From assembly GCA_950097015.1 (NCBI GenBank), contig CATNEN010000039.1:19654001-19718000 (forward strand): DNA of 64,000 nucleotides, given 5' to 3'. A model generated the notes under the pieces. It was not told the origin of the DNA, did not search any database, and worked only from the letters and a program-made list of their open reading frames with translations. Positions within the stretch are counted from its first letter, which is position 1, and each line of letters begins with the position of its first letter. Below, in pieces: positions 3,801 to 54,600 of this stretch. This stretch comes from Macrostomum hystrix. Lineage: Eukaryota > Animalia > Platyhelminthes. The position numbers and the translations under genes were made by a program.

Positions 3801-6800
3801 TAAATAGTATTTAGTAAATATATTATAGTTATTATAGTATCTATGGATTATACAATGTGAAGTTACACTATGGGCTATTCAGTTTTCAAATGAGACTTTA
3901 CGTCTTGCAGGCTCGTGCTTTCCGAGTGGGAAGGCTGACGGGGTACTTCCGAGCTTTGGGTCTATGGTACTTTTCTGATTACTAAAATATTTTAAAGCTA
4001 TATAGAGCGAGCTAAAAAATGTCAGTTTTTCTTTACATGTTTCTACTTTTTGTCTTCCGTGTCTCATATTTTGCCGTAGTGGAACTCCTAGTGAGGGCGT
4101 TTCACAAACGAGAAACGTTAAAATTTCACGCCGATATTTCACAACGTCGAATCGTACTACAAAGATAGGAGACTTCACAACGTCACAAAGTCTCCTATCT
4201 GTTCAGTACGATTCGTCGTTGTGAAATTTCAACGTCGAGAAATTTTAGCGTTCAAAAATGTAAGTTTTGCGAAAGTGCCCCCGAACTTTGCATGTTCAGA
4301 CGGATAAACTTGTGTGAAACTTGAAAAAATACGCTTTCAAATTTCGAAAAAATTGCCTTACCTGTTGCTTCTGCTTTTGCTGCTGTTCGGCCTTTGGCTG
4401 CCTCGGTCCGCAGCAGGCAAACGGTGACTTCTTCTGAACGGCGCCGGCAGCGGCGGCCCGGGCGGCCGCCTCTTGCCGTTTGAGGTAGCCGGGGTCGTCC
4501 ACCTCCTGGCAGGCGAAGGCCAGATTGCGCACGGCGCACAGGCAGTTCTCTAGGCCGGGCTGGTTCACCTCCAGCTGGGCTGCCTGGGCGGACAGCAGCG
4601 GCCAGACGATGGAGTCCGGCAGGCCGGCCGCCTTGCGCAGTCGGGCGCGCCACTGCTCGCCAGGGGTTGAAGACACAGAGCGGAGCACACCGGAGGCGAG
4701 GTAGAATAGGAAGGTAGCATGCATTGGCTGGTGCACACTGACATATGCGTCGCCACGCAGCTCCAGGCCAGCGTGAGACAGCAGCACCGTCTGGACCTTG
4801 GTGATTTTTCAAATAAATCAAAGCAACATGCGTTGAATTTTATTTAAAATTGCGATTAACGATGAATTGAAACCTTAAACTCAAGCTTGAGTTTAAAATT
4901 AAGCTTTGATGCTTCAACAAGAGGTTCGATTCTTTGTACGGGGGAGTGGCAGAGTGGTTTAACGCGTTTGTGTTACTTCATAGCTTTCATACTTCAACAG
5001 GAGCTTTGATACTTCAACAGGAGCTTTGATACTTCAATGGGAGCTTTGATACTTCAACGAGAGCTTTGATACTTCAACGGGAGCTTTGATACTTCAACGA
5101 GAGCTTTGATACTTCAACGGGAGCTTTGATACTTCAACGGGAGCTTTGATGCTTCAACGGGAGCTTTGATACTTCAACGGGAGCTTTGATACTTCAACGG
5201 GAGCTTTGATACTTCAACGGGAGCTTTGATACTTCAACGGGAGCTTTGATACTTCAACGGGAGCTTTGATACTTCAACGGGAGCTTTGATACTTCAACGG
5301 GAGCTTTGATACTTCAACGGGAGCTTTGATGCTTCAACGGGAGCTTTGATACTTTGGTTGGTAGCTACATGATTAGAGAAGCAATTTTTGAACTTGAAGG
5401 ACCAAAAGCCTAGGGTTTTAATTGTGAATTTAAAGTAAATTTCGCACCAGGGCTTGAACGCATGTGTCGATGACGTCCGGTTTTAAGCTCGGAGTGGAGC
5501 TTATGTTCCACACTGCGGCGCAGGCGATCTCGCGCGACTCCTCATCGCGGCTGTTGGCGATGACGTCGCTGAGCAGTTTCAACACGCCGAGGCGGCACAG
5601 CTCGAGCTTGAGCTCGTCGAGCTTCTGATCGGAGATCGGCTCGCGGTGCTTTATCAGCTCGTCATCCTCATTCGACCTGACAGATAGCGGTGGGGGCAAA
5701 AGTCCGCTCATGTTATAAATCAAACCAGTACATTAACCATCAATTTCCGAACCCGGCCGAGCAAGCACTAACCGAAAGGAGACATTGCGCACAATGCCTA
5801 GCAGATTCCTCAGAAGGTCAAAGCCGCTGCCGCGTCCGCCGCCTACAACCGATTGAAGCAGGGCCACCAATTGTGGTAAGCCGCCTAGCCGGAAGAACTC
5901 CAGCTTGGCGTAATTGTCGGAAAATGTAATGTGCTGGATGAAAGCTGTAGCGTGCAGAATAGTTTCGTCGTTTCCTGAGCGCAAGTAAGCAACGAGATCG
6001 GCCATTGTGGGGTCGCGAAAACCGGCCGTGCCGCTATCGACCGTCTCCACTTGGCGAGACTGCTGGTGCGTTACCGAGCGCTCAGTCTGAGTCTGCATGC
6101 GGGTTTCCTGGCGCATCGTTGACATGGCAACGGCTGCGGATGACTCTTCGTGCAGGTCGATGTCACGCACAGATAGGCCGTAGCCTCCGGCAGCTCTGCC
6201 GCCTCCGGTGCTGCCACCGCCGGCACTGCCCTGAGAGCGCAGTGTCAACGAGGCGCTGCCACCGACGCCACCGGCGATGCGAGCGTTGGGCGAGGGCAGA
6301 GCTACAGGGCAATGAAAGAGGCTATGAAAGCTATTGTCACAAGCTACTTGAAAATTCCCCTCTCTCTCCTTTGTTCAAGATCAACTTCTCAACTTACAGC
6401 CGAGCGAGCCAAACTTGTCAGATCGCGTCAAAGTGAGGCCTCCAACGCCGACACCAACTTCAAGGCCGTCAATATCGTCACTGTGCAGCTCCCTGTAGTT
6501 GACGTATTGGTTCTGATCAACCGCTACTGTAGCCGACTGGCGCGACTGCCTGCCAGCATAATCCAAGCCGGAAGCTTGCGAGGCGTGAAGGCTGCCCGCT
6601 GAAGGTCGCGAACCCTGACGTTTGGTCTCGATGGAGACCGTGTAGTCGTAGCCGACGCCAACGCCTCCACCGCCGTAGCCGTTGACATACTGGGGTGATC
6701 GAGGACCACTGAGGTTGGACACAGAGCCCAGTCGGCCTCCGCCATTGCTGCCGCCTGTCACCTGCCGGCTAGAAGTGGTTGTGGAGTACTCAAAACGCTG

Positions 6801-11200: not shown

Positions 11201-12590
11201 ACCCCAAGCCACCTCATCAGAAATCCCAACCCTCAGAAATCCCAACCCCAAGCTAGATCATCAGGAATCCCAACCCTCAGAAATCCCAACTCCAAGCCAC
11301 CTCATCAGAAATCCCAACCCCAAGCCACCTCATCAGAAATCCCAACCCCAAGCCACCTCATCAGAAATCCCAACCCTCAGAAATCCCAACCCCAAGCTAG
11401 ATCATCAGAAATCCCAACCCTCAGAAATCCCAACCCCAAGCCACCTCATCAGAAATCCCAACCCTCAGAAATCCCAACCCCAAGCCACCTCATCAGAAAT
11501 CCCAACCCCAAGCCACCTCATCAGAAATCCCAACCCCAAGCTAGATCATCAGGAATCCCACCCCAAGCCACCTCATCAGAAATCCCAACCCCAAGCCACC
11601 TCATCAGAAATCCCAACCCTCAGAAATCCCAACCCTCAGAAATCCCAACCCCAAGCCACCTCATCAGAAATCCCAACCCCAAGCCACCTCATCAGAAATC
11701 CCAACCCTCAGAAATCCCAACCCCAAGCTAGGTCATCAGGAATCCAACCCCAAGCTATATAATCAGGAATCCCAACCCTCAGAAATCCCAACCCCAAGCT
11801 AGATCATCAGGAATCCCAACCCCAAGCCACCTCATCAGAAATCCCAATCGCAAGCTGCCTCATCAGAAATCCCAACCCTAAGCTACCTCATCAGAAATCC
11901 CAATCGCAAGCTGCCTCATCAGAAATCCCAACCCTAAGCTACCTCATCAGAAATCCCAATCGCAAGCTGCCTCATCAGAAATCCGAACCCTAAGCTACCT
12001 CATCAGAAATCCCAACCCCAAGCCACCTCATCAGAAATCCCAACCCCAAGCCACCTCATCAGAAATCCGAACCCTAAGCTACCTCATCAGAAATCCCAAC
12101 CCCAAGCCACCTCATCAGAAATCCCAACCCTAAGCTACCTCATCAGAAATCCCAACCCTAAGCTACCTCATCAGAAATCCCAACCCTAAGCTACCTCATC
12201 AGAAATCCCAATCGCAAGCTGCCTCATCAGAAATCCCAACCCTAAGCTACCTCATCAGAAATCCCAATCGCAAGCTGCCTCATCAGAAATCCGAACCCTA
12301 AGCTACCTCATCAGAAATCCCAACCCCAAGCCACCTCATCAGAAATCCCAACCCCAAGCCACCTCATCAGAAATCCCAACCCTAAGCTACCTCATCAGAA
12401 ATCCCAACCCTAAGCTACCTCATCAGAAATCCCAACCCTAAGCTACCTCATCAGAAATCCCAATCGCAAGCTGCCTCATCAGAAATCCCAACCCTAATCT
12501 ACCTCATCAGAAATCCCAACCCTAAGCTACCTCATCAGAAATCCCAATCGCAAGCTGCCTCATCAGAAATCCCAACCCTAAGCTACCTCA
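11201..12590. repeat. Minisatellite, 28-bp unit AAGC(C/T)ACCTCATCAGAAATCCCAACCC(C/T) with 16-bp sub-unit TCAGAAATCCCAACCC
   Basis: Direct tandem repetition over ~1.4 kb, with variant units clustered in blocks. Confidence 0.97.
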
Positions 12591-13902: not shown

Positions 13903-15790
13903 ATGCTACTGTTACGCAAAGCCTGCCAGGACACCACAGCCCACGGTCTGCCTCGTCTGGTCACTGGCAAGCCGGTCTTCATCCGCGTCGTCTGGCTGCT
14001 GCTCTTCCTGTTCTTCCTGTGCCTCTTTCTTCGCGGCCTAGTCGGCTTCGTGGTCAAGCTGCAGAGTCGTCAGGTGACCTCATCCTTGCAGGCTGGCGAG
14101 GCGAGGTTCCAGTTCCCGGATGTGTATGCGTGCTTTGAGAACCCAGTGTCCGGCACCTACTCTGCGAACATGAACGACAGCACTATTGAGCAGCTCAATA
14201 CCAGATTGAATGAAACTTCTATATGGCTTGAATTATTAGCAAAGAATTCGATGATACAAAACATTTCAACTAAAACCGAGACGCAGATTTCAGCAGAGGT
14301 CGAGCAAATTAAGCGAAAGTATAGTCAGTTTTATATTTCGTCACTACCATATAGCCTGCTGGTCGATACAATTGCTCAACGCCCGGAGCAATCTGTTCTG
14401 TACAGCGGGGTCATGAAAATTAACGAGATGGGTGTCCTTGTCGATTCAGCCGTCGATTACAATTCATTCTACCACGCAACCCAACTGCGCTGCTATCGCT
14501 GGAGCGCCGACATCTCACCTGTACTGAGGACTCTCGAGAGCCGGAACAGCCTAATTGTCACATTGTTCATTGACGACTATGACGGCACGTCGATTCCAAA
14601 ACTGAATGGCAAGTCGGTGGTGTCGCCAGTGTACGCATACTATGAACCGCCGAATGGCAGCAGCGCCATGTGGCGCAGGGTTCCCGTGTCCGACTGGTCA
14701 CTGAAGGCGGCTAACAGACTAAAGCAGGATCGAAAAGCTGGGATTCGAGTCTTTTTAATGACTCCTGGAGAATATCCGTCCGATTTTGGCAGTTCCTTTC
14801 TACTCGCTCCGGGGAAGCATCATGTGGTAAGAAGATATGCGACAAAAAAACTGAAGCACGTGATTTTTCAAACGCTGCGAAAAAGTATAATTTATTTTGT
14901 CTCTAATGATGAAAATGTACCATCATCGTGCTGATTTTCAGGTCGAAGTCACAATGCAAGAGGAGCTGCGCAGTTCTGATCAGTTTGACTGCCTCAGCAA
15001 TCCCAATCAAGTCCAGTTTTTAAACACATACGACTGGACGCCCTACAAGCACGAATACAGCTATTCCTACTGCTACTTTGACGAGTACAACAAGAACTCT
15101 GTGCTAGTAAGCAGCTTTCTAGCTCCCGACATTCCGCTAAATTGGAATGCTCGAGAAGCACAAAGCTATTTTAACCTCACTGGGCGGCCCCGAATCACAC
15201 TGACTGGAAGTTCATCATCCAACCAAGTTAATTTCGATGACCTGGCTTCCGCGGCCTGCAAAAGCCGAGAGCGCTGCTCCAGACTCATCTATGGTACCCG
15301 GATCTCCAGTGCGACCTGGCCGACGACCAGCTCTCTCGAAGGATTCCTGAGCGCAACAGTGACGAAGGCGAGAAACGAAGCTGCTGGACGAGGACTCTCC
15401 GTGCCAGGACTTGACTACCTGGTGAACGCCAGCTTGGGAAACTCCAGTGTCCCAGCTGCCGCGGTCGCATTCGCCAGAGCAAACCTGCTCAAGCTGGAGA
15501 TCCGACCGTCGCGCATGGACTGCGACAGATTGAAGTTCTCCATCGACTACGGCTTTGAGAACTTTGTTGCCGACATCGGAGGCATCATGGGCATCTACCT
15601 TGGCATGTCACTGCTCACCATCTGCGAGCTGTTCGACCTCATCGCTGAGCTGCTCTACCTGAAGCAGTGCGCATCCAGAGAGCGGAAATCTCGAAAAGTT
15701 ACGAATTCCACTAGTCAGGAGAATCCTAGTGATGAGCCGCCGCCTATGCGAACCGATTGTTATGAGACAACACAATCAGCCGCTAATTAG
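13903..15790 (+). CDS. DEG/ENaC (amiloride-sensitive channel family) subunit, copy 1 (exons 13903-14826, 14942-15790; about 590 aa)
   Basis: TTAHG gating motif, TM1, FPDVYAC, SSATWP, and ADIGGIMGIYLGMSLLTICELFDL (TM2 with GxS filter). One phase-0 GT-AG intron joins the two ORFs. Confidence 0.93.
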
Positions 15791-16585
15791 TTAACCAACT
15801 GACGGACAGTATTGGTCAATGAATGCTTCTGAAACTCATATTGTCATAAATGAATCATTTTTTATGACTAAGGCACACTTGCTCTTGTAGATGGGATAAA
15901 ATATTCTACGAGCGTAGGATGTGCCCTTTATACGAGTAGAACTATGACAGTAGTAGATTGTTCACTTTTTAACACAATTTTGAACTCCTCAGCAGTCTAA
16001 TATCATTTGGTCGATCGTATCAATTTTTCCCCATGAATATTTTATTTCTTTTTATTTGACGACTTTTTTATTGCGCGTCATTTAGTGACATTTGTAGACA
16101 GTAATATAACGACTTCGTTGGTCGTACGAAAAATGGTATAATTGTTTCATCAGTTTAAAACAAATGTAATTGGCATGTTTGTATTGCATTAATTATTTAA
16201 ATTGCAATGCAACGGATCATTGTTGATAGAAACTACCTTCTCCAAAAGTCCTGAAGTTTGAGCAAATTGGTTCAAACTCATTGGCTAAGTAAACGAGACT
16301 CATGTCACTCGGTAGGTCGGGTCCCTGCCAATGAGAGGTCTCTGTACAAACAATGTCCTATTTGTCCTGCCTGGACTAACAAAGCACTGGCGACTGAGGG
16401 TTAAGAAGAAATAGAAATCGATTAAATAAATTTCCCAAGCTGCCAGAGTATCGTAGAATCAAGCTTCGCCAGGATCTACTACATTTATTCTATTCCGACA
16501 GGCAAAAATACCCGTTCAAAAAGGTCGCCCTTCTCTAAACTTTACTCGATAGCTTTAAGCAGTTTGTGAAACTGCAATCGCATTA

Positions 16586-18373
16586 ATGCTGCAGTTAAAG
16601 CTTCGAGCAGCCTGCCAGGACACCACAGCCCACAGTCTGCCTCGTCTGGTCACTGGCAAGCCGGTCTTCATCCGCGTCGTCTGGCTGCTGCTCTTCCTGT
16701 TCTTCCTGTGCCTCTTTCTTCGCGGCCTAGTCGGCTTCGTGGTCAAGCTGCAGAGTCGTCAGGTGACCTCATCCTTGCAGGCTGGCGAGGTGAGGTTCCA
16801 GTTCCCGGATGTGTACGCGTGCTTTGAGAACGCAGTGTCCGGCACCTACTCTGTGAACATGAACGACAGCACTATTGAGCAGCTCAATACAAAAATAAAC
16901 GATACTTCATCAATAATGGAATATTATGCGCTAAAATCGAACCCAGCGAGTGAATTGTCGAGCATCAACAACTTCAGAGAACTATACAGCTATTTCTATC
17001 CACCTTCACTCCCCTTTCGGTTGCTCGCTGACTCTCTAGCTCGAAGGCCAGAACAAACGGTCCTGTCCAGCGTCACTTACGAGTATCAAACCAGCGGGAA
17101 CAGTACTCAACAAGAGGCTAGAGTCCCTTACGATAGCTTCTATCACCCAACGTTTCTCCGTTGCTTCCGATGGAGCCAGGCCACGTCTTCGACTCTGAAG
17201 ACCTTACAGAGAAGAAGCCTCACAATTTCTTTGTTCACCGATGCCTATGACGGCCGGTCCATACCTAGCCTCAATGGCAAGTCTATCGAATCGCCAGTTT
17301 ATCTAAAAGAGGACTCTTTCAACTACAAAGTTCCAGTTGGAGATTGGACTCTTTTGCCGAATGATCTAGCCAAGCCCGATCGAAATTCGGGAGTTCGAAT
17401 CTTTCTTATGCCCCCAGGGGAATATCCCTCGGAGTTCGGGACTTCGTTTCTGCTTTCACCTGGTCAGCATTTTCTGGTAGGTCTCGAGTCACATGCATAT
17501 TACCGCACACTCTTAAGAATTCATCTCATTGCTAGACCGAATGCTGTCATTGTCTTCGCCCTTTTGAAACAATTTTAGATTGAGCTTTCAATGCGAGAAG
17601 AGCTGCATAACCCGGATCAGTTTAACTGCGTCAACGATGTTCAACAAGTTCAATTTGTCAATCCGTACGACTCAACGCCGTATAACCACGAGTACAGCTA
17701 CTCGTACTGCTACTTCACAGAGCTCAACAGAGCAGCAGTGTCGTGGATCAACAATACAATTGCGGGCACTCCTATCCCATGGTCTCTGAAAGATACCAAC
17801 AACTGCGTCAACATGAGCAGTACACCGAACTTCTTAGAAACGTTAGTAAAGGTCCTCACGGACCCATCATTTGGAGCTTCGCTTTCAAAGATGGAACTAG
17901 ATAGCGTTGCAACATCAGCCTGCAAGAGCCGAGAGCGCTGCTCCAGACTCGTTTACGATGCTAGGATCTCCAGTGCGAGCTGGCCGACGACCGCCTCACT
18001 AGAAGGATTTCTCGGTACGACGGTGGCCACTGCGAGAGACAAAGCGGTCAGCAAGGGACTCTCCGTGCCAGGACTTGACTACCTGGTGAACGCCAGCTCG
18101 GGAAACTCCAGTGTCCCAGCTGCCGCGGTCGCATTCGCCAGAGCGAACCTGCTCAAGCTTGAGATCCGACCGTCGCGCATGGACTGCGACAGACTGAAGT
18201 TCTCCATCGACTACGGCTTCGAGAACTTTGTTGCCGACATCGGAGGCATCATGGGCATCTACCTTGGCATGTCACTGCTCACCATCTGCGAGCTGTTCGA
18301 CCTCATCGCTGAGCTGCTCTACCTGAGAGAGTGCTCAGGAAGATCTAAAAACTCGGTCAATGTGTCGAGGTAG
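16586..18373 (+). CDS. DEG/ENaC subunit, copy 2 (exons 16586-17476, 17579-18373; about 561 aa), HG motif changed to HS
   Basis: Same motifs and intron position as copy 1. TTAHSLPR instead of TTAHGLPR. Confidence 0.92.
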
Positions 18374-19227
18374 TCTTAAGTAGGTTTTTTGGTCCTCTGT
18401 CCGGAGGAGTCCTGAAAAACGTTTTGTAGATTTTGGCCATAGTTTTCCTTGATTTACCTTTTCGAAGCACAATTTACGTTGGATTTGACTATACAATTTT
18501 GAGCACAATGCGTATGTTTACTCCTGTTTTTGTTAAAATCTAAGAAAACTCCATAAATGTATATTGCTTGTCATGCTTTCAACCTAATCAAGACAGACTC
18601 TAAATTATCCTAATTAGAGTTAGTCACAGAATAAGATTATAGTTGAAGAGGTGTAGCCAGCTAACTTTGTTTGCGACAGACGAGCCTAACGTAGCGGTTT
18701 CCAAATAAAGCAGTTATGCTTAATAACCAAATTGGGCTGCATTGTCATAAAGCATTGCCACAGCCCTAACAATGGTGCTCTCTCAATAATTAGCGAAAAT
18801 GATAGATTTTGCTGCAAGATTGTTAGGCAAGCCTGGGCTAGCCTGCTTGTGGACATAAACTGGTATTGCCCTGCATGGGACCCTTAATTGCAAATACCTG
18901 CAGTAAAACAAATAAAGCTAGCTTGAGTATATTTACTCACCGGTTCTAAAATCAAAGGTAATAAGCCAATGAATGGTTAGAAGCTGAAGCATTTTAGTCC
19001 CCTCTGCATTGTGGGGTAGAAGAACAATGAGCTATATATATTTATTCAATGTGAGGCTCTAACTTAATTTGGTGCTAGTGTAAAATAACAAAGCATTCTT
19101 GGAGAGACTTATAGCATCGTCGCAATAAAAAAATTAACAACAAAAGGAAAATATTTTTCAGAAAGAAATCGCTCAGACTTTGAATAAAAAGGATTCAAGG
19201 GACTTCTCAATCACGGATTCAGACCTC

Positions 19228-21062
19228 ATGCTGCAGTTAAAGCTTCGAGCAGCCTGCCAGGACACCACAGCCCACGGCCTGCCTCGTCTGGTCACTGGCA
19301 AGCCGATCTTCATCCGCGTCGTCTGGCTGCTGCTCTTCCTGTTCTTCCTGTGCCTCTTTCTTCGCGGCCTAGTCGGCTTCGTGGTCAAGCTGCAGAGTCG
19401 TCAGGTGACCTCATCCTTGGAGGCTGGCAAGGCGAGGTTCCAGTTCCCGGATGTGTATGCGTGCTTTGAGAACCCAGTGTCCGGCACCTACTCTGTGAAC
19501 ATGAACGACAGCACTATTGAGCAGCTCAATGCCAGCATTTCACAGACATTCGATGCTATCAAAAGGTACATTAGAGTTGCAGCAGGTAATAATTCAGCAA
19601 GCACTGATGATATCATGAGGCAGTCGAGTGACTTCGCGAAGCAATCAGGGTACTACTTTCCGCAGTCGATGCCGTACACTCTGCTGGCAGATGCGCTAGC
19701 TCATAGAGCTGAGCAGTCAGTCCTTCTCAGCACAGCTTTTAAGGCTAACGAAATGGGTTACTTTTTAGACATGCCAGTGAACTTTAGCCAATTTTACCAT
19801 CAAACCTATCTTCGATGCTTTGTTTGGACCACCGAAAACTCTCCAGAATTAAAGACGATCTCCAGTCGAAACAGCCTGGACATTACAATGTTCCTTGACG
19901 TGCTCGATGACGCGTCAAGCTTAATTATCACTGGCAAGTCGATTGAGTCTCCTGTGTTTGTCAGTTACAAGCCTCTAAACTCATATGAAACCGTATTCAA
20001 ACGGCTCCCAGTCTCAGAGTGGTCATTGACACCCAGTGACAATTCTCGATCTGACCGTCGGTTGGGAGTTCGAGTTTTTTTAATGCCGCCTGGAGAATAT
20101 CCGTCCAATTTTGGCAGCTCGTTTCTTCTCGGCCCTGGTCGGCATCATCAGGTGTGATATTTTTACAACTTTTTGCTTTCATATGCGTCTTTTTTTCTGA
20201 CGACGTAATTTCGACTCCACGCTTTCCGTAGATCGAGGTTACCATGCAGGAGGAAGTGAGGGATCCTGAGCAGCTAGACTGTGTCAGCACTGTCGAACGA
20301 GTCCAGTTCCTCAATCCTTACGCTCAGACACCATACAGCCAAGCGTACAGCTACAGCTACTGCTACTTTGACGAGTACAACAAAGCGTCCATAGCCTACT
20401 CAAACTATTTAACCCCAGGAGTTCCATCGACATGGGACCAGAGATACTATTTGTCGGCTCTTAACTTGACTGGACCAAATACCTTCTTGGACCTATTGGC
20501 TCAGTACTTTTTACGACCACCACCAACAATAGCTCAAGTAAACCTGGACCAGCAAGCTACATCAGCCTGCCAGAGCCGAGAGCGCTGCTCCAGACTCATT
20601 TACGATGCTCGGATCTCCAGTGCGAGCTGGCCGACGCCTGCCTCTCTGGGGGCGTTCCTCGGTACGACGGTGGCCACCGCGAGAGACAAAGCGGTCAGCA
20701 AGGGACTCTCCGTGCCAGGACTTGACTACCTGGTGAACGCCAGCTCGGGAAACTCCAGTGTCCCAGCTGCCGCGGTCGCATTCGCCAGAGCGAACCTGCT
20801 CAAGCTTGAGATCCGACCGTCGCGCATGGACTGCGACAGACTGAAGTTCTCCATCGACTATGGCTTCGAGAACTTTGTTGCCGACATCGGAGGCATCATG
20901 GGCATCTACCTTGGCATGTCACTGCTCACCATCTGCGAGCTGTTCGACCTCATCGCTGAGCTGCTCTACCTGAGAGAGTGTTCAGGAAAATCTAAAAAAT
21001 CTGCTAAAGTTTCCGACGATGTTCAGGGTATGTCCCGTATTAATGTGGTTTCGATTCAGTGA
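19228..21062 (+). CDS. DEG/ENaC subunit, copy 3 (exons 19228-20151, 20232-21062; about 584 aa)
   Basis: Same motifs and intron position as copies 1 and 2. ATG at 19228 aligns with the copy 2 start. Confidence 0.93.
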
Positions 21063-25300: not shown

Positions 25301-26897
25301 AAGGCGCGTTTGTTGAAGAGTAGGAATATTTAAATAATTACATCGTCATTTAGCTGTGCGATGCGCGCCAAAGCAACAAACTCATTAGGCCAACCCCAGG
25401 TTCCGCTCTTACGATTCTCTGATTCTCCTCGTTGATGTTGACATTGTAGTGGAACGAAGCCAGGGCGGATCTGTGCTTCCACTTCCTCAGCTGCTGGTTG
25501 GCATAGCGGATAAATTTGTGAGCACAGCTAGACAGCTGAGATTCGCTCAGTCCGTCTAGGCTGTACTTCCAGCCTGAAGTGTTGGGTTTCAGGATTAATT
25601 TGTTAATCTGTGTTTTTGAATTTCAGTTTCTAGCAACTGACAATTTTGATCACATTATTTTCTATTTAATAAAGCGATCAGAAAAAATTAACGACTTAAT
25701 GGCAAAAGGTCAGAGAAATAACTTAGGTGACTAAACTCAGGCACGAAACTTCAGGTACAAAACTTCAGGCACTAAACTTCAAGCACTAAACTTCAAGCAC
25801 TAAACTTCAGGTACTAAACTTCAGGTACTAAACTTCAGATACTAAACTTCAGATACTAAACTTCAGGTACCAAACTTCAGGCACTAAACTTCAGGCACTA
25901 AACTTCAGGCACTAAACTTCAGGTACTAAACTTCAGGTACTAAACTTCAGGCACTAAACTTCAGGCACTAAACTTCAGGCACTAAACTTCAACCACTAAA
26001 CTTCAGGTACTAAACTTCATGTACTAAACTTCGGATACTAAACTTCAGGTACTAAACTTCAGGCACTAAACTTCAGGTACTAAACGTCAGGTACTGAACT
26101 TCAGGTACTAAACTTCTTATATACTAAAAATGAAATGGTTGGTTGCTTGTCAGGTACTAAACTTCAGGCACTAAACTTCAGGTACTAAACTTCAGGTACT
26201 AAACTTCAGGCACTAAACTTCAGGCACTAAACTTCAGGCACTAAACTTCAAGCACTAAACTTCAGGTACTAAACTTCATGTACTAAACTTCGGATACTAA
26301 ACTTCAGGTACTGAACTTCAGGCACTAAACTTCACGTACTAAACTTCAGGCACTAAACTTCAGGCACTAAACTTCAGGCACTAAACTTCAGATACGAAAC
26401 TTCAGGCACTAAACTTCAACCACTAAACTTCAGGTACTAAACTTGAGGTACTAAACTTCAGGCACTAAACTTCAGGTACTAAACTTCAGGTACTGAACTT
26501 CAGGTACTAAACTTCAGGCACTAAACTTCAGGCACTAAACTTCAGATACTAAACTTCAGGTACTAAACTTCAGGTACTAAACTTCAGGTACTAAACTTCA
26601 GGCACTAAACTTCAGGTACTAAACTTCAGGTACTAAACTTCAGGTACTAAACTTCAGGTACTAAACTTCGAAGACTTAACAAACTTTAGAAGACCTAAGT
26701 GCGCACAGCAACTCACAATGCGCCCTGTGCTGATCCCGTCGTAGTTTCGATAGCAAGCGACCAAGCTCGCTAGACTGCCAGCCCGGATGTCTGGCTGAAG
26801 GCTCGTAGGCGGCCTGACCACAAACAAATGCTATGGCAATCGTCAGCAGGCTGGCGGTCAGCCATAGCAGCCTGGACGCCGACGGACGCAACTGCAT
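22337..26897 (-). CDS. ACE: Angiotensin-converting enzyme-like peptidyl-dipeptidase (peptidase M2), single domain, secreted (about 681 aa; exons 26897-26717, 25573-25413, 25296-25136, 24729-24455, 24344-23643, 23569-23326, 22895-22773, 22535-22337)
   Basis: Signal peptide, HHEMGH zinc motif, [11 protein letters not shown] third zinc ligand, GYIRYF, CDFYKS and [10 protein letters not shown] motifs. Intron phases are consistent (exon 4 needs a GAG acceptor, less certain). No C-terminal TM segment. Confidence 0.92.
22991..23313 (-). mobile_element. SINE family A copy in ACE intron 6
   Basis: tRNA-like head (TGGCAGAGCGG / GCTCGATTCC), family body and (TTA)n tail on the minus strand. Confidence 0.88.
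25727..26670. repeat. Minisatellite, 14-bp unit ACTTCAGG(T/C)ACTAA, in ACE intron 1
   Basis: Tandem copies over ~0.95 kb with one short interruption near 26120-26150. Confidence 0.97.
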
Positions 26898-37060: not shown

Positions 37061-37875
37061 CATGCAGCCCCAAGGTGATACATGTACATGTACTATGCGC
37101 ATAGTGTCTCGATGAAGTAAAAAACATCAGTAGCTGGCAATTATAACTAACTGCTACTTGTAAGTGTATCGCTCGTGTTAAGATGTTCTGATCAATGTAT
37201 TTCGCCTTCCAATGCATACTCTCTGTAAAAATGCAAGCTTTTAATTTGCCGTCGCAATACTATTGCATGATAGTATACCCAATCATATTGTAAATATATT
37301 CTAATTTATTACTTTATAATTTCATTACTCTACCGTTCGAGAGCCATTGCAGCCAAAGACAATCTGTCCCTTATCTCATTTTTTCCTTTTCTGTGTCATA
37401 GTTTACGGGTCTCGCTCTCAGAACTTAAATCGTTCGAAGATGTTGCTCATCGAACAGTTCAAAAATATATTCTAGAGTTCGGCGTTTATCAACGGTGCTT
37501 TTTCCTCGTCCTCAGTGTCTTCCAATTTGAGTGTGTTGTAAATGTCCAGCCCGGTGTCACCGATGACGTGCAGGAACAAATTAATTCAGCGCTTAACGAT
37601 GCCTGTGGCCCTGAGGTAGATCAAGAATTTCTGACGCCATCGTTTTTAAGTCTCTTTGGAGTCAGTCTCCAACTCTCGTTGCGATTTCAGGTGTTCCTCA
37701 AGCGAGGACAAGAGCAAAGCTCAATTGTTCTTTTCGGCTTCAGCCGATACATAAGCACACGCAGAGCCAGAAGCGATTCAATAATAAGGTTGCGAGAGAG
37801 AACGCGATAGCTTGTACAACTAGCTAGACCTGTTTACACACTTGCACAAACGCTACATATTACAATCTTCTCTGC

Positions 37876-38425
37876 TGTCACTGCTCACCATCTCATCAGC
37901 TGTCACTGCTCACCATCTCATCAGTTGTCACTGCTCACCATCTCATCAGCTGTCACTGCTCACCATCTCATCAGTTGTCACTGCTCACCATCTCATCAGC
38001 TGTCCCTGCTCACCATCTCATCAGCTGTCACTGCTCACCATCTCATCAGCTGTCACTGCTCACCATCTCATCAGCTGTCCCTGCTCACCATCTCATCAGC
38101 TGTCACTGCTCACCATCTCATCAGCTGTCACTGCTCACCATCTCATCAGTTGTCACTGCTCACCATCTCATCAGCTGTCACTGCTCACCATCTCATCAGT
38201 TGTCACTGCTCACCATCTCATCAGTTGTCACTGCTCACCATCTCATCAGTTGTCACTGCTCACCATCTCATCAGTTGTCACTGCTCACCATCTCATCAGC
38301 TGTCCCTGCTCACCATCTCATCAGCTGTCACTGCTCACCATCTCATCAGCTGTCACTGCTCACTATCTCATCAGTTGTCACTGCTCACCATCTCATCAGC
38401 TGTCACTGCTCACCATCTCATCAGC
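37876..38425. repeat. Minisatellite, 22 x 25-bp unit TGTCACTGCTCACCATCTCATCAG(C/T)
   Basis: Direct tandem repetition, 550 bp. Confidence 0.97.
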
Positions 38426-38926
38426 TTAGTAGCAGTCGCCAGCTTTCACCCCATCAAAGTCCTAGATAGCTGGACCCAATAGCTATGTACTCTAGCGGCT
38501 ATGAATTTCAAATTTACTTGAAATCTGAAATCATTTGTTAGTTGATCCACACTAAATTATTATTACCCCCAGGCCTGGGTACGCTTTTGAGTTAAGTTAG
38601 GTAAAAATGTTATGAGGCTTTTAAATTAGCTTAAATTAAACTGCAGTTGAGTTTATGGCATCCTGGCTGCATCCTGCCAGGCACGCAACTGCACAGCTCC
38701 TATCCATTCTTTTTAGTCGCATCCTCGCTTGCATGTTGAGTTGTCTTTTTTCTTTCCACCCTCAATATAGTTTGAACAATCCAATTAAATAAGCAAAAAA
38801 CGCAGCGTTGCTATGCATGCATCCCGCCCAGGGACAAACGCTATAAATGCAGAAAATGTATTTGCCTAAACCTCGACGTGACCATAAAACTCCGCTGTGC
38901 CAGTTTGACAAGAAAATAATTCGGTT

Positions 38927-40141: not shown

Positions 40142-41750
40142 TAACAGACACCCCATCAATGCACTGCAGATAACAGACACCCCATCAATGCACTGCAGAT
40201 ACCAGACACCCCATCAATACACTGCAGATACCAGACACCCCATCAATACACTGCAGATACCAGACACCCCATCAGTACACTGCAGATAACAGACACCCCA
40301 TCAATACACTGCAGATAACAGACACCCCATCAATGCACTGCAGATAACAGACACCCCATCAATGCACTGCAGATACCAGACACCCCATCAATGCACTGCA
40401 GATAACAGACACCCCATCAGTGCACTGCAGATAACAGACACCCCATCAATACACTGCAGATAACAGACACCCCATCAGTACACTGCAGATAACAGACACC
40501 CCATCAATGCACTGCAGATAACAGACACCCCATCAGTACACTGCAGATAACAGACACCCCATCAATGCACTGCAGATAACAGACACCCCATCAGTACACT
40601 GCAGATAACAGACACCCCATCAATGCACTGCAGATAACAGACACCCCATCAGTACACTGCAGATAACAGACACCCCATCAATGCACTGCAGATAACAGAC
40701 ACCCCATCAATGCACTGCAGATAACAGACACCCCATCAATGCACTGCAGATAACAGACAGCCCATCAATACACTGCAGATAACAGACACCCCATCAATAC
40801 ACTGCAGATAACAGACACCCCATCAATACACTGCAGATAACAGACACCCCATCAATACACTTCAGATAACAGACACCCCATCAATGCACTGCAGATAACA
40901 GACACCCCATCAATGCACTGCAGATAACAGACAGCCCATCAATACACTGCAGATACCAGACACCCCATCAATGCACTGCAGATAACAGATACCCCATCAA
41001 TACAGTGCAGATAACAGGCACCCCATCAATGCACTGCAGATAACAGACACCCCATCAATGCACTGCAGATAACAGATACCCCATCAATACAGTGCAGATA
41101 ACAGACACCCCATCAATACACTGCAGATAACAGACACCCCGTCAATGCACTGCAGATAACAGACACCCCATCAGTGCACTGCAGATAACAGACACCCCAT
41201 CAATATACTGCAGATACCAGACACCCCATCAATGCACTGCAGATAACAGACACCCCATCAATGCACTGCAGATAACAGACACCCCATCAATGCACTGCAG
41301 ATAACAGACACCCCATCAATGCACTGTAGATAACAGACACCCCATCAGTACACTGCAGATAACAGACACCCCATCAATACACTGCAGATAACAGACACCC
41401 CATCAGTACACTGCAGATAACAGACACCCCATCAATGCACTGCAGATAACAGACACCCCATCAATGCACTGCAGATAACAGACACCCCATCAATGCACTG
41501 CAGATAACAGACACCCCATCAATGCACTGCAGATAACAGACACCCCATCAATGCACTGCAGATAACAGACACCCCATCAATGCACTGCAGATAACAGACA
41601 CCCCTTCAATGCACTGCAGATAACAGACACCCCTTCAATGCACTGCAGATAACAGACACCCCTTCAATGAACTGCAGATACCCGACACCCCATCAATACA
41701 CTGCAGATACCAGACACCCATCAATGCACTGTAGATGACGGACACCCCGT
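40142..41750. repeat. Minisatellite, 29-bp unit TAACAGACACCCCATCAAT(G/A)CACTGCAGA
   Basis: About 55 tandem copies. Confidence 0.97.
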
Positions 41751-43397: not shown

Positions 43398-43799
43398 TTT
43401 TGTCAGCTGATTGCTTGCTTGCTATATTCTCGCATTTATCTGTTATAAATATACGAGTGTAAATGGTAAATCATTTTGCATTCGCTTTCGCAATCATGTA
43501 CTAGGCTTTGCTTGCTTGGCCTGAGACTTTTTAAAACTCATTATTTAATTTTGGTGTTTTCAATGAATATTAATTGTGTCTTTATAAGCGATTGGTGGAG
43601 GAGCGTAGCAACACGAAACCAAAAGGCACCAAGTTTTCTTCCTTTAATTAAAAATGTGACGATCGATCAGATCATCGCGTAACAATACACAAGAAAACTG
43701 TACATGGAACTGATGTAATAAGATTGAAAAGCATTGAATTTCGAAAATCCATAAGTTAGAACTAAGTTCGATCACTGAGAAAAAATCACATGTACAGAC

Positions 43800-45985
43800 A
43801 CGTCGACGTCAGACACACAAACGCACAGACATTTTGATGTCAGACGCACAAACGCACAGACATTTTGATGTCAGACGCACAAACGCACAGACATTTTGAT
43901 GTCGGACACACAAACGCACAGACATTTTGATGTCAGACACACAAACGCACATACATTTTGATGTCAGACACACAAACACACAGACATTTTGATGTCGGAC
44001 ACACAAACAACGCACAGACATTTTGACGTCGGACACACAAACGCACAGACATTTTGACGTCGGACACACAAACGCACAGAAATTTTGACGTCAGACACAC
44101 AAACGCACAGACATTTTGATGTCAGACGCACAAACGCACAGACATTTTGATGTCAGACGCACAAACGCACAGACATTTTGATGTCGGACACACAAACGCA
44201 CAGACATTTTGATGTCGGACACACAAACGCACAGACATTTTGATGTCAGACGCACAAACACACAGACATTTTGATGTCGGACACACAAACAACGCACAGA
44301 CATTTTGACGTCGGACACACAAACGCACAGACATTTTGACGTCGGACACACAAACGCACAGAAATTTTGATGTCGGACACACAAACGCACAGACATTTCG
44401 TCGTCAGACACACAAACGCACAGACATTTTGATGTCGGACACACAAACGCACAGACATTTTGATGTCAGACACACAAACGCACAGACATTTTGACGTCAG
44501 ACACACAAACGCACAGACATTTTGATGTCGGACACACAAACGCACAGAAATTTTGATGTAGGACACACAAACGCACAGAAATTTTGACGTCAGACACACA
44601 AACGCACAGACATTTTGATGTCAGACACACAAACGCACAGACATTTTGACGTCAGACACACAAACGCACAGACATTTTGACGTCGGACACACAAACGCAC
44701 AGAAATTTTGATGTCGGACACACAAACAACGCACAGACATTTTGACGTCGGACACACAAACGCACAGACATTTTGACGTCGGACACACAAACGCACAGAC
44801 ATTTTGACGTCGGACACACAAACGCACAGACATTTTGATGTCAGACACACAAACACACAGACATTTTGATGTCGGACACACAAACAACGCACAGACATTT
44901 TGACGTCGGACACACAAACGCACAGACATTTTGACGTCGGACACACAAACGCACAGACATTTCGTCGTCAGACACACAAACGCACAGACATTTTGATGTC
45001 GGACACACAAACGCACAGAAATTTTGATGTAGGACACACAAACGCACAGAAATTTTGACGTCAGACACACAAACGCACAGACATTTTGATGTCAGACACA
45101 CAAACGCACAGACATTTTGACGTCGGACACACAAACGCACAGACATTTTGACGTCGGACACACAAACGCACAGACATTTCGTCGTCAGACACACAAACGC
45201 ACAGACATTTTGATGTCGGACACACAAACGCACAGAAATTTTGATGTAGGACACACAAACGCACAGAAATTTTGACGTCAGACACACAAACGCACAGACA
45301 TTTTGATGTCAGACACACAAACGCACAGACATTTTGACGTCAGACACACAAACGCACAGACATTTTGATGTCGGACACACAAACGCACAGACATTTTGAT
45401 GTCGGACACACAAACGCACAGACATTTTGATGTCAGACACACAAACACACAGACATTTTGATGTCGGACACACAAACAACGCACAGACATTTTGACGTCG
45501 GACACACAAACGCACAGACATTTTGACGTCGGACACACAAACGCACAGACATTTTGATGTCAGACACACAAACACACAGACATTTTGATGTCGGACACAC
45601 AAACAACGCACAGACATTTTGACGTCGGACACACAAACGCACAGACATTTTGACGTCGGACACACAAACGCACAGAAATTTTGATGTCGGACACACAAAC
45701 GCACAGACATTTCGTCGTCAGACACACAAACGCACAGACATTTTGATGTCGGACACACAAACGCACAGACATTTTGATGTCAGACACACAAACGCACAGA
45801 CATTTTGACGTCAGACACACAAACGCACAGACATTTTGATGTCGGACACACAAACGCACAGACATTTTGATGTCGGACACACAAACGCACAGACATTTTG
45901 ATGTCAGACACACAAACACACAGACATTTTGATGTCGGACACACAAACAACGCACAGACATTTTGACGTCGGACACACAAACGCA
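43800..45985. repeat. Satellite, 31-bp unit GTC(A/G)GACACACAAACGCACAGACATTTTGA(T/C) with 34-bp variants
   Basis: About 70 tandem copies. This explains all the CVCVSD-type ORFs in the track. Confidence 0.97.
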
Positions 45986-51674: not shown

Positions 51675-54600
51675 TCAGGGAGGTCCGTGTTCGGTCCTTC
51701 CTGCAGCTTGTTCCTCGCTGGGGAAGAAAGAGGCTCGTCTGGTAGCCCTTAGGAACCGGACGAGCCGCGGGATGTTCTCGGATCTGCAAACATCGTCCAT
51801 TGATGGGTTTGGTCCGAGGTGATTGAGCCTCTCTCTGGTGAAGAAAGGGCAGTGGCAGACGAAGTGCAGGGCATCCTCGTCCTCAAGGTTGCAGAAAGGG
51901 CACAGCTCACTCCGGAGGTCTCCACGGAGGAAACAGTGTCTGGCGTAGCAGCCATGGCCCGTGAGGGTCATGGTGAGGGCCCGGATGTCCTTCCGGGTCT
52001 GGTTCAGAAGGACCTTCCGGAGCCGAGCGGATGGCACTGGAACTGCCGCTTTGGATTGGCGGCAGTTAGTGGTGCTTCTCCACCGGGTAAGATGGAGGTT
52101 GGCGGTCCAATCATTAATCTGACGATAAATGACGGTGCTCGGAATCGGAGCCGGGGGGGAGGGGCCCGGCGCAGAGCTGGCTCCTCCCTGCTTGGCCAGG
52201 TGGTCAGCAAGCTCGTTACCAGGAAAACCGGCGTGCCCTGGTATCCACTGAAGTCTGACGGTATTCTTACCGGCCAGGTTATTGAGCTGCCGGACACAGT
52301 CGGAGACTGTCCGGGAGGTTGTGGTGGTGTGACAGAGGGCTTGCAGAGCAGCCTGACTGTCCGAGTGAAAGATGATAGTCCTGCCTGAGATGTTTTTCTC
52401 ATTCAACTCCGCAGCGCAGGAGCTGATGGCCAGGACCTCGTTCTGGAAAACGCTCGAGGATTTTCCAGTGTGTTGGGCGTGTGTGGCGACAACACGTCCG
52501 TTGATAAGGATACAGACCCCGAAGCCAGCGGAGCCATCCTTCATGGATCCGTCCGTGTAGCAGTGGATCTCCTGGGTGTTCCAGTGGTCGCTAACTTGGT
52601 CCCTGGTGGGGATGAGAACCTTAAAGCGCTGAAGGAGGTTGAGCGAGCACGGTTCACCGTCCGTAAGGACATTGATTCCGTTGCTCGCACCCAAGTCTCT
52701 CAGGCAAAGGTCCGTGTGCGGCAGGAGCTTTCGCTTCGCTGCCGCTCGTTGGGGGACGAAGCGCACACCGGCATCAAGGAGACGCCGGGCGGTTTTTGCC
52801 GCCTCCCCGCGGATAAAGATATCGAGCGGGAGGATGTTCAAGAAGGCGTTGAGGCCATCGAAGGGGGCGGATGGCGGGGCGCTCATGATCGTCCGACATG
52901 CGTGACCTTGCACTCTCCGAAGAGTCTCATGGCAGGTCTTAAGCTGAAGGGCACTAGCCCAGATCAGTCCGGCGTACGAGACAGCCGGCCTGACCATAGC
53001 AGTGTAGATCCACCATAGGCGTTTGGGGGTGAGACCCCACGTGTTGCCCACCGCCCTGCGCAGCTGCGCCAGGATCGCAAAGGCCTTTTTGGCTTTGGCA
53101 TGGACATGAGGAGTCCAGCTGAGCCTGTGATCGAGCGTTATGCCCAGGCATTTAGTTTGCTTCTGGAAGGTGATGTCCTTTCCATACAGCTGCAGGGGGC
53201 GAATATGCCATTTGTTTTTGCTGGTGAACATGATCGCCGCTGTCTTAGACTCGGAGAGCTTCAGACCGCAGCGAGTTGCCCATCTTTCGGCGTTGTTGAT
53301 AAAGTTTTGCAGAAGGTCTCGGAGGGCCTCTGGTACCGGGCCAGATGCCACTGCCGTAACATCATCCGCATAGCCGACCTTTAGGATGGGGTCTGGCTGA
53401 GAGTCTCGTAAGAGCTCGTCGATAACCATGTTCCAGAGAACTGGTGAGAGGACGCCGCCTTGTGGGCAACCTTTGCAGACAGTGACCGTCCGCTGGTGTC
53501 CAAGAAGGTGTGCCGTAGCAGTGCGGTGGCGGACCATGTACATGATCCACCTCCTAAGATGCGAATGCGTGTGCCGCATACGTAGGGCCCTGTCAAACGC
53601 CTCGAAGAGAACGTTGTCGAAGGCCCCGTCAATATCCAGGAAGATGCTCAGGGCAAAGCCGTTCCCGAGGACGGCCTTTTCCAGAGCGTCCACCAGAGCG
53701 TGGAGAGCGCTTTCGGTGGAACGTCCCGACCGAAAGGCGTGTTGATTGCCGCTTAGTGGCATATTTTTCAGCTCCACGGAGAGGAGGCGCCAGAGCACCA
53801 ATCTCTCCATCAGTTTGACCATGGTGGAGGTAAGGCTAATTGGCCGAAACGATTTAATGGAATGGTAGTCCGGGCGGCCTGGCTTGGGGATAAAAACCAC
53901 CCTCGCCTCGGTCCATGCCTTCGGAACATACCCAAGCACAATGCAGGCCTTAAGGAGCTTGCAAAGATTAGTGAGGAAGCCATGGCATTTTACCGCCTCG
54001 CGGATGAAGGCTGGTATAATGCCGTCCGGCCCCGGGGATTTGAAGGGTTTGAAAGACTGGGCTGCCTTGGTAACCCGGTCTTCAGTAATGATGGACGTCG
54101 CAAGGATATGACCTCCCTCGGTGTGATCCGGGGGGTCTGTCCCTGCTGGCACGCTGGGGAAAAAGGCTGTGAGCATAGTGTCGAGCGTTTCCCCAGGGTT
54201 CTCGGTGGGTCGGCCATCGGCCTTCCTCACCGTCGAAAGCTTGGACATTTTGTCCAGCGTGAGGGCTTTGACAATTCTGGAGGTGGGGCGAGTGCCCTCA
54301 AGCTCCTCACAGTATTGCCGCCACTTGCTGTTTTTGGCGTTTCTGACTTCCTTCTTGAAGCTATGGATGGCTTCGAGATACGCAGCCTGATCAGCCGGGT
54401 TTTTTGTCTTCGTGGCCCTGCGGTGCAGCCGCTTCGCCGTTCGACGGAGCTCGCCGAGCTGCGGATTCCACCATGGGGCCGAAGTTTTGCCTCTGTAAGC
54501 TTTGAGGGGGCAGGAGGCCTCGAAGGCGGTGGTCAGCGAGTTGGTGAGAAACTCAGCTAGCTCATCCGCTTCATCGCAGGTGTTGGCGGGGGGGCTTAGG

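What the first reader, a model, noticed from the sequence alone, without database searches (positions are those of the whole stretch)
13903..21062. Tandem DEG/ENaC array with homogenised pore segments and hypervariable extracellular domains
Seen: a ~280-nt block covering the N-terminus, TM1 and the first beta strands (13921-14199, 16610-16888, 19252-19530) and a ~270-nt block covering the pre-TM2/TM2 region (about 15392-15662, 18056-18326, 20703-20973) are almost identical among the three genes, including synonymous positions. The ~1.2 kb between them, the intron and the intergenic DNA are strongly diverged with indels, and the first boundary is abrupt (after GAGCAGCTCAAT, EQLN). Known: in DEG/ENaC channels the finger and thumb regions determine the stimulus, and the TM segments form the pore of a trimer. 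Inference: recurrent gene conversion or unequal crossover keeps a common pore and assembly interface while sensor domains diversify. This would give a combinatorial receptor repertoire, and the identical flanks could act as recombination arms for swapping variable cassettes.
Basis: partly seen in the sequence, partly recalled or inferred. Interest (0 to 1): 0.82.

Follow-up and report, generated by a model that had tools for sequence, protein, structure and literature searches.

The report
Gene-converted ends in three flatworm channel genes
Three old neighbouring sodium-channel (DEG/ENaC) genes of the flatworm Macrostomum hystrix keep copying two short stretches, the membrane-pore ends, between each other while the outer domain has drifted far apart; this is a clean new example of the familiar process of gene conversion, not a new kind of receptor system.

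Summary
Window 13903-21062 holds three intact, same-strand, two-exon DEG/ENaC genes (Pfam ASC).

- **Homogenised blocks.** Block A (N-terminus, TM1, first strands; about 276 nt) and block B (pre-TM2 and TM2; 271 nt) are 97-100% identical among the three genes. Synonymous difference (pS) there is 0.01-0.07.
- **Everything else is old.** The 1.2 kb between the blocks has saturated pS (0.56-0.83). The introns and spacers cannot be aligned.
- **Not a family-wide constraint.** The same columns in other paralogs of this genome have pS 0.6-0.8.
- **Other evidence.** The blocks show no RNA structure signal. Third-position GC is 0.78 in the blocks and 0.54 elsewhere, in these three genes only. Genes 2 and 3 share longer, nested tracts.

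Best reading: repeated, region-restricted ectopic gene conversion between old tandem paralogs (confidence 0.85).

"Hypervariable" is not supported, because ectodomain divergence is ordinary for old paralogs here. "Cassette swapping" and a "combinatorial repertoire" are untested.

The phenomenon is known from TLR1/TLR6 and clustered protocadherins. Earlier notes of this scan reported mosaic conversion in polycystin and EGFR paralogs of this same genome. I found no paper reporting it for DEG/ENaC. Verdict: new member of a known kind, moderate interest.

The parts
13903..14826 (+). Gene 1, exon 1 (308 codons): N-terminus with the HG motif, TM1, first half of the ectodomain
   Evidence: The ORF matches Pfam ASC profile positions 2-258. 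A GT donor follows at 14827. The M. lignano relative P0001 aligns colinearly across the exon junction.
14827..14941 (+). Gene 1 intron (115 nt, GT..AG, phase 0). It cannot be aligned to the introns of genes 2 and 3.
14942..15790 (+). Gene 1, exon 2 (282 codons plus stop): second half of the ectodomain, TM2 with the GMS filter motif, C-terminal tail
   Evidence: Matches Pfam ASC profile positions 249-454. Aligns to FaNaC and ASIC1 around TM2.
16586..17476 (+). Gene 2, exon 1 (297 codons)
17579..18373 (+). Gene 2, exon 2 (264 codons plus stop). The intron is 17477-17578.
19228..20151 (+). Gene 3, exon 1 (308 codons)
20232..21062 (+). Gene 3, exon 2 (276 codons plus stop). The intron is 20152-20231.
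13924..14199 (+). Block A, copy in gene 1: homogenised tract covering the HG motif, TM1 (13957-14067) and about 45 residues after TM1
   Evidence: pS is 0.01 against genes 2 and 3. Only 9 single-gene differences occur among the three copies. The tract ends abruptly at 14199.
16586..16888 (+). Block A, copy in gene 2. It is identical to gene 3 from the ATG onward.
19228..19530 (+). Block A, copy in gene 3
15392..15662 (+). Block B, copy in gene 1: homogenised tract covering the last ectodomain strands and TM2 (15566-15661). It ends at the inner end of TM2.
   Evidence: pS is 0.06-0.07 against genes 2 and 3. There are 6 differences in 271 nt.
18056..18326 (+). Block B, copy in gene 2
20703..20973 (+). 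Block B, copy in gene 3
17912..18355 (+). Longer tract shared only by genes 2 and 3, gene 2 copy. The upstream part is of intermediate age (pS 0.13-0.35). The core has one difference in 271 nt.
20559..21002 (+). Longer tract shared only by genes 2 and 3, gene 3 copy

Best explanation
Three intact tandem DEG/ENaC channel genes in Macrostomum hystrix arose by old tandem duplications. Their silent sites, introns and spacers are saturated or unalignable.

Since then, non-crossover ectopic gene conversion between the copies has repeatedly overwritten two short coding tracts.
- Block A covers the N-terminus, HG motif, TM1 and first strands.
- Block B covers the last palm strands and TM2.

The 1.2 kb ectodomain-coding middle has escaped conversion and diverged to about 50% amino-acid identity under ordinary purifying selection.

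At least four or five events are needed: two per block to homogenise three genes, plus an older and longer tract between genes 2 and 3.

**Shown:** the mosaic, its statistics, and its restriction to this trio.

**Inferred:** the mechanism (heteroduplex repair or synthesis-dependent strand annealing between misaligned copies). Also inferred is why the tracts stop where they do. I favour a self-reinforcing limit. Conversion needs long, near-identical homology. Only the slowly evolving pore-forming ends kept that homology, and each event renews it. Selection for a shared pore or assembly module may add to this, but it was not tested.
For: - **Silent-site contrast.** pS is 0.01-0.07 in blocks A and B, against 0.56-0.83 in the variable coding parts of the same genes.
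- **Old duplicates.** Introns and intergenic DNA cannot be aligned.
- **No general silent-site constraint.** The same alignment columns give pS 0.59-0.81 between gene 1 and 8-9 other paralogs (nine for block A, eight for block B). They give 0.63-0.72 within other pairs (X2-X3 and Y1-Y2 tandem; X3-P27 not tandem). So TM regions of this family carry no general constraint on silent sites.
- **Not chance.** Identical runs of 106-182 nt compare with at most 35-73 nt in 5000 shuffles.
- **Nested tracts of different age.** The adjacent genes 2 and 3 share the longest tracts.
- **GC bias.** Third-position GC is 0.78-0.79 in the blocks and 0.54-0.55 elsewhere (Fisher p between 3e-7 and 1e-8). This holds in the trio only. 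Eight other paralogs differ by -0.05 to +0.07, as expected for GC-biased conversion.
- **Favourable geometry.** The copies are in the same orientation, 2.6-5.3 kb apart, and are each other's closest relatives in the variable part too (48-55% amino-acid identity; next paralogs 36-45%).
- **No RNA explanation.** There is no Rfam match, and the blocks fold no better than shuffled sequence.
- **Precedent elsewhere in this genome.** Partial homogenised blocks are seen in other DEG/ENaC pairs. Earlier scan notes, which I did not re-test, report the same in other receptor families.
Against: - No second species or population data could be examined. The classic proof, paralogs more alike than orthologs, is therefore missing. 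The only database relatives are two M. lignano proteins at 38-42% identity.
- Raw reads were not available, so the assembly is taken on trust.
- The GC3 contrast has two sources. The trio's variable parts are AT-shifted relative to other paralogs (27 against 99 changes), and the blocks are also unusually GC-rich. It is compatible with biased conversion but not unique to it.
- The three block copies are not independent observations.
Confidence: 0.85

Rival explanations
1. Selection-maintained shared pore module. This is the adaptive version of the reader's idea. Conversion tracts are retained by selection because the three subunits must co-assemble, or must share gating and pore properties. Selection also keeps conversion out of the sensor domains.
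For: The blocks coincide closely with functional units. Block A starts at or near the ATG and holds the HG motif and TM1. Block B ends at the inner end of TM2. Conserved mid-gene segments (pN 0.1-0.2 around the exon junction) were not converted. The TLR1/TLR6 case was interpreted in the same way (PMC2077338).
Against: There is no evidence of co-expression or co-assembly. The unconverted conserved segments are short (about 90-150 nt at 70-80% identity) and may simply be below the homology needed for conversion. Most other tandem DEG/ENaC arrays in this genome show no such blocks, so a shared pore is not a general requirement of tandem subunits.
Confidence: 0.3
2. Recent tandem triplication followed by very fast, positively selected divergence of the ectodomain. 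On this view the blocks are simply unchanged since a recent duplication.
For: The three genes are each other's closest relatives throughout.
Against: Silent sites between the blocks are saturated (pS 0.56-0.83). Introns and spacers cannot be aligned, and neutral DNA cannot reach that state in the time that leaves pS at 0.01-0.07 in the blocks. Ectodomain pN is below pS and typical of old paralogs.
Confidence: 0.03
3. Constraint at the nucleotide level on the blocks, from an RNA structure, an overlapping element or a regulatory target, rather than copying.
For: The identity includes silent sites.
Against: Other paralogs show saturated silent divergence in the same columns. There is no Rfam hit. 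Fold z-scores are +1.21 and -0.17. The antisense ORFs in block A are only the reverse complement of the hydrophobic TM1 codons. The tracts differ in length between gene pairs.
Confidence: 0.03
4. Assembly or polishing artefact. On this view, reads from one paralog were used to correct the others during Arrow or Pilon polishing.
For: The published assembly was built from PacBio reads with canu and polished with Arrow and Pilon (PMC10468722). Short reads can mis-map between near-identical copies.
Against: Mis-mapping needs pre-existing near-identity and cannot turn about 70% identity into 98%. The copies keep 15 single-gene differences. A graded tract of intermediate divergence exists between genes 2 and 3. 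The reading frames are intact. The reported assembly quality value is 42.8, with mostly single-copy k-mers.
Confidence: 0.05

Closest known systems
Region-restricted gene conversion between the tandem paralogs TLR1 and TLR6 (Kruithof et al. 2007, PMC2077338)
   Same: Both are neighbouring receptor paralogs in which a defined tract is kept near-identical by conversion. In TLR1/TLR6 the tract covers the last LRRs, the transmembrane segment and the signalling domain. In both cases the ligand-binding part diverges and the tract limits recur.
   Different: Here there are two separate tracts that bracket the ectodomain, three genes instead of two, and an ion-channel family. Independence of events across species was shown for the TLRs but could not be tested here.
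Regional sequence homogenisation in clustered protocadherin variable exons (for example fugu, Yu et al. 2007, PMC1852091)
   Same: Both are tandem arrays of membrane receptors with lineage-specific regional conversion. Part of each paralog is homogenised while other ectodomain parts stay diverse.
   Different: Protocadherins also share constant exons by splicing. The DEG/ENaC trio consists of three complete, separate genes, and its array is tiny (3 genes).
Mosaic conversion in other tandem receptor genes of the same genome
   Same: Same genome and the same kind of patchwork: about 99% identical blocks within anciently diverged paralogs.
   Different: A different gene family. Those notes are AI reports that I did not re-test.
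DEG/ENaC channels with solved structures (ASIC1, FaNaC)
   Same: The Pfam ASC domain, two TM segments, the HG motif, a GxS-type filter motif (GMS) in TM2, and a cysteine-bearing ectodomain.
   Different: These genes are very distant from characterised channels. Exon 1 finds no solved structure by sequence. Exon 2 matches only around TM2, with E-values of 2e-8 and weaker. The ligand or stimulus is unknown.

Membership tests
DEG/ENaC channel family (Pfam PF00858 ASC) | Match to the ASC profile above the curated cut-off | tested here: met
   All six exon ORFs score 48.6-63.2 bits against a cut-off of 23.6. The exon 1 ORFs cover the first part of the 455-position profile (from position 2 to 256-266). 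The exon 2 ORFs cover the rest (from 249-288 to 454).
DEG/ENaC channel family (Pfam PF00858 ASC) | Two transmembrane segments flanking a large extracellular domain | tested here: met
   A Kyte-Doolittle scan finds exactly one hydrophobic segment per exon, near the N-terminus of exon 1 and near the C-terminus of exon 2.
DEG/ENaC channel family (Pfam PF00858 ASC) | HG motif before TM1 and a G/S-x-S filter motif in TM2 | tested here: met
   TTAHGLPR lies before TM1, and YLGMSLLT lies in TM2, in all three genes. That these motifs define the family rests on established knowledge of it.
DEG/ENaC channel family (Pfam PF00858 ASC) | Trimeric, amiloride-sensitive cation channel activity | not testable with these tools
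   This needs expression and electrophysiology.
Region-restricted ectopic gene conversion between tandem paralogs | The tract is far more alike than its flanks at synonymous sites, beyond chance | tested here: met
   pS is 0.01-0.07 in the tracts against 0.56-0.83 outside them. Identical runs of 106-182 nt compare with at most 73 nt in 5000 shuffles.
Region-restricted ectopic gene conversion between tandem paralogs | The same region is not under general silent-site constraint in unconverted relatives | tested here: met
   pS is 0.59-0.81 in the same columns against 8-9 other paralogs (nine for block A, eight for block B) and 0.63-0.72 within other pairs.
Region-restricted ectopic gene conversion between tandem paralogs | Within the tract, paralogs of one species are closer to each other than to their orthologs in a sister species | not testable with these tools
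   No DNA from another Macrostomum species is available in these tools. The only relatives found are M. lignano proteins at 38-42% identity.
Region-restricted ectopic gene conversion between tandem paralogs | GC-biased composition of the converted tracts | tested here: met
   GC3 is 0.78-0.79 in the blocks against 0.54-0.55 elsewhere, in the trio only. Part of the contrast comes from an AT shift in the variable parts.

The most novel reading that the evidence does not exclude
The two conversion-maintained tracts are held by selection as a common pore and assembly module. This would let the three neighbouring subunits co-assemble into heterotrimers with mixed sensor domains. It would be a genomic counterpart, without shared exons, of the constant-region logic of clustered protocadherins, and a general route by which expanded DEG/ENaC families build combinatorial receptors.
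Probability: 0.2. Interest if true: 0.65.

Novelty: new member of a known kind. Interest (0 to 1): 0.38.

Why it matters
This is a very clean natural example of conversion confined to the pore-forming ends of an ion-channel gene while the ligand- or stimulus-sensing domain is left alone. There are two tracts, sharp limits, a GC-bias signature, and unconverted arrays in the same genome that serve as internal controls.

For people working on DEG/ENaC channels, it flags three subunits with an identical pore and about 50% different ectodomains. That is a ready-made set of natural chimeras for asking which part sets the stimulus, and whether an identical pore module favours heteromer formation.

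For genome evolution, it adds to signs that mosaic conversion between tandem receptor genes is frequent in Macrostomum hystrix. It does not reveal a new mechanism.

Tried and rejected
- **The look-up of encoding contigs.** I tried it to look for independent assemblies or transcripts of the exon ORFs.
- **Cross-species test.** The word search with the gene 1 exon 1 ORF found only one relative, M. lignano A0A1I8GD92, at 39% identity. Searching with that protein found one more at 38%. Both are too distant, and protein only.
- **Solved structures.** Exon 1 finds none by sequence. Exon 2 matches only around TM2. The domain mapping of the variable part therefore rests on the Pfam alignment and family knowledge.
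- **Joined protein.** I did not build, search or fold the joined protein, so no 3D model was made.
- **RNA-level explanations.** There is no Rfam hit and no fold signal.
- **A general rule for tandem DEG/ENaC arrays.** Rejected. Arrays X, Y, W and V show uniformly saturated pS, and several other pairs are whole-gene young copies. Only two other pairs show a partial block.
- **Older mosaics inside the variable region.** The three possible groupings are about equally frequent, so none was found.
- **The big protein search (search of protein representatives).** Not used, because the family assignment was not in doubt.
- **Source of the contig.** It is not human. Its assembly statistics match the published M. 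hystrix assembly exactly.
Full report
**Source.** The window is G000:C39:19654001-19718000 of a 220,453,370-base assembly in 42 contigs. The total length, contig number, N50 (13,505,968, the length of C7) and longest contig (35,345,953, C38) match exactly the Macrostomum hystrix assembly of Wiberg et al. 2023 (PMC10468722). The best database relatives are M. lignano proteins. The contig is from a flatworm, not from a human.

**What is there.** Window 13903-21062 holds three same-strand genes, each with two exons and one short GT..AG phase-0 intron.

| Gene | Exon 1 | Exon 2 |
|---|---|---|
| 1 | 13903-14826 | 14942-15790 |
| 2 | 16586-17476 | 17579-18373 |
| 3 | 19228-20151 | 20232-21062 |

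- All six exon ORFs match Pfam ASC (PF00858) above the cut-off. Exon 1 covers roughly the first half of the profile and exon 2 the second.
- The M. lignano relative P0001 aligns colinearly across the junction, which supports the splice model.
- Each gene has exactly two hydrophobic segments, an HG motif before TM1, a GMS motif in TM2 and conserved ectodomain cysteines.
- No frame is broken.
- The joined protein was not built, searched or folded.

- Blocks A and B sit at the coordinates given and are 97.8-98.2% identical between genes.
- On a genomic alignment, identity is 0.95-1.00 inside the blocks. It is 0.3-0.8 in the coding DNA between them, and at the level of unrelated sequence in introns and spacers.
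- Site by site, block A has 9 single-gene differences and block B has 6.
- Block A ends for all three genes at the same base, after GAGCAGCTCAAT.
- Block B starts for all three at GGACTCTCC (15392) and ends at the inner end of TM2 (15662).
- Genes 2 and 3 are identical from their ATG, with unalignable DNA just upstream. Gene 1 joins at codon 8.
- Genes 2 and 3 also share a longer 3' tract (about 17912-18355 and 20559-21002). Its upstream part is of intermediate divergence.

**Is it conversion?**
- Nei-Gojobori counts give pS 0.01-0.03 in block A and 0.01-0.07 in block B. The variable parts give 0.56-0.83, which is at or near saturation.
- The introns and spacers cannot be aligned, so the duplications are old. 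A recent triplication with fast ectodomain evolution is excluded.
- The same alignment columns give pS 0.59-0.81 between gene 1 and eight or nine other paralogs.
- They give 0.63-0.72 within other pairs whose ectodomains are no more diverged than the trio's.
- The family therefore has no general silent-site constraint on its TM regions.
- The blocks fold no better than shuffled sequence, and nothing matches Rfam.
- Identical runs of 106-182 nt exceed anything seen in 5000 column shuffles, where the maximum was 35-73 nt.
- Third-position GC is 0.78-0.79 in the blocks and 0.54-0.55 elsewhere in the trio (Fisher p between 3e-7 and 1e-8). Eight other paralogs show no such contrast, with differences of -0.05 to +0.07.
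- This fits GC-biased conversion acting over a long time. Part of the contrast, however, comes from an AT shift of the trio's variable parts.
- Homogenising three genes at two tracts, plus the nested older tract between genes 2 and 3, needs at least four or five events. "Recurrent" is therefore justified.
- In unconverted pairs these blocks have drifted to about 70-79% nucleotide identity. That is too low to restart homology-dependent exchange. This last step is my inference from the known homology requirement of recombination.
- It follows that exchange in the trio must have continued since the duplications, while the middle dropped out early.

**What is not supported.**
- The ectodomains are not "hypervariable". 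Their pN is 0.28-0.39, within the range of other old pairs (0.19-0.43) and below pS. The cysteine scaffold is kept. They are simply old.
- The trio are each other's closest relatives in the variable part as well (48-55% amino-acid identity; next paralogs 36-45%). The middles were therefore not imported from elsewhere.
- The three possible groupings are about equally supported along the variable part. Nothing suggests that cassettes were swapped between the identical arms.
- Unequal crossover would homogenise whole flanks, not two short blocks.
- Whether the tract limits reflect selection for a shared pore or assembly module, or merely the places where purifying selection preserved enough homology, cannot be decided here. 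I lean to the second, with selection possibly contributing.

**How unusual is it?**
- The genome holds a very large DEG/ENaC family: at least 99 matches to the profile and 517 first-look candidates.
- Among the other arrays I sampled, most pairs show uniformly saturated pS or are whole-gene young copies.
- Two pairs show a partial block.
  - One is a tandem pair at C39:10.386/10.394 Mb. Its last exon (pre-TM2, TM2 and tail; 502 nt) is 94.6% identical, while the exon before it is about 72% identical.
  - The other is a pair on C3, whose first roughly 100 codons have pS 0.2-0.3.
- Earlier notes of this scan describe mosaic conversion in polycystin-like and EGFR paralogs of the same genome. I did not re-test those notes.
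- In the literature held here I found no report of gene conversion within DEG/ENaC arrays.
- The phenomenon itself is well known from TLR1/TLR6 (PMC2077338) and from clustered protocadherins (PMC1852091).

**Artefact.**
- The assembly was made with canu from PacBio reads and polished with Arrow and Pilon.
- Cross-polishing can only act on copies that are already near-identical.
- The copies keep private differences, and one tract shows a graded, intermediate divergence.
- I rate an artefact at about 5%. Raw reads would settle it.

**Verdict.** The adaptive and "cassette" parts of the interpretation are unproven, and "hypervariable" is wrong. This is a new member of a known kind and is of moderate interest.

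Noticed in passing
L018 and L019 (G000:C39:10392399-10395481 and 10384881-10387963), positions about 1213-1702 of each locus: This is a second tandem DEG/ENaC pair, 7.5 kb apart. Its last exon (pre-TM2, TM2 and C-terminal tail) is 94.6% identical over 502 nt. The preceding exon is only about 72% identical and differently spaced. It looks like another 3'-end conversion block.
   Followed up: partly
L029 and L030 (G000:C3:5940001-5957000), genes Z1 and Z2: The first roughly 100 codons (N-terminus and TM1) have pS 0.2-0.3, against 0.5-1.0 (mostly 0.6-0.8) for most of the rest of the gene. This may be an older 5' conversion tract in another tandem DEG/ENaC pair.
   Followed up: partly
window 51675-55376 (-), with an adjoining ORF at 55339-56448 (-): An intact 1233-residue ORF carries endonuclease, reverse-transcriptase and RNase H domains. 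It is a non-LTR retrotransposon and lies in the GC-rich part of the window (57-60% GC).
   Followed up: partly
window 4982-5354, 11201-12590, 25720-26669, 37874-38426, 40142-41748, 43794-45985, 56020-56574: There are seven long minisatellite arrays (units of 14-96 nt, up to 70 copies). Several have strong strand skew. The array at 11201-12590 lies 1.3 kb upstream of gene 1.
   Followed up: no
window 63718-64000 (-), continuing beyond the window (G000:C39:19717718-19719262): A fourth, unrelated, intronless DEG/ENaC gene (630-residue open frame) is cut by the right edge of the window. It shares no block with the trio.
   Followed up: no
L022:858-1166, L025:507-812, L031:7840-8094, L019:937-1190, L029:3533-3731, L036:2523-2701, L047:420-630: A dispersed repeat of about 170-310 nt (88-92% identity between copies) lies next to many DEG/ENaC genes. 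It is probably a SINE-like element.
   Followed up: no
L050/L051 (C7:10.838 and 10.919 Mb), L033/L034 (C1:14.40-14.41 Mb), L041/L042 (C11:3.37-3.38 Mb): These are whole-gene, near-identical inverted DEG/ENaC duplicates: 99.7%, 98.7% and 94.1% identical over 1.8-2.0 kb. The family is still expanding, or whole genes are being converted.
   Followed up: no
window 14200-15391 and the matching parts of genes 2 and 3: Third codon positions of the trio's variable parts are AT-shifted relative to the majority of eight paralogs (27 changes to G/C against 99 to A/T in gene 1). This suggests a local AT-biased mutation pressure that the converted blocks escape.
   Followed up: partly
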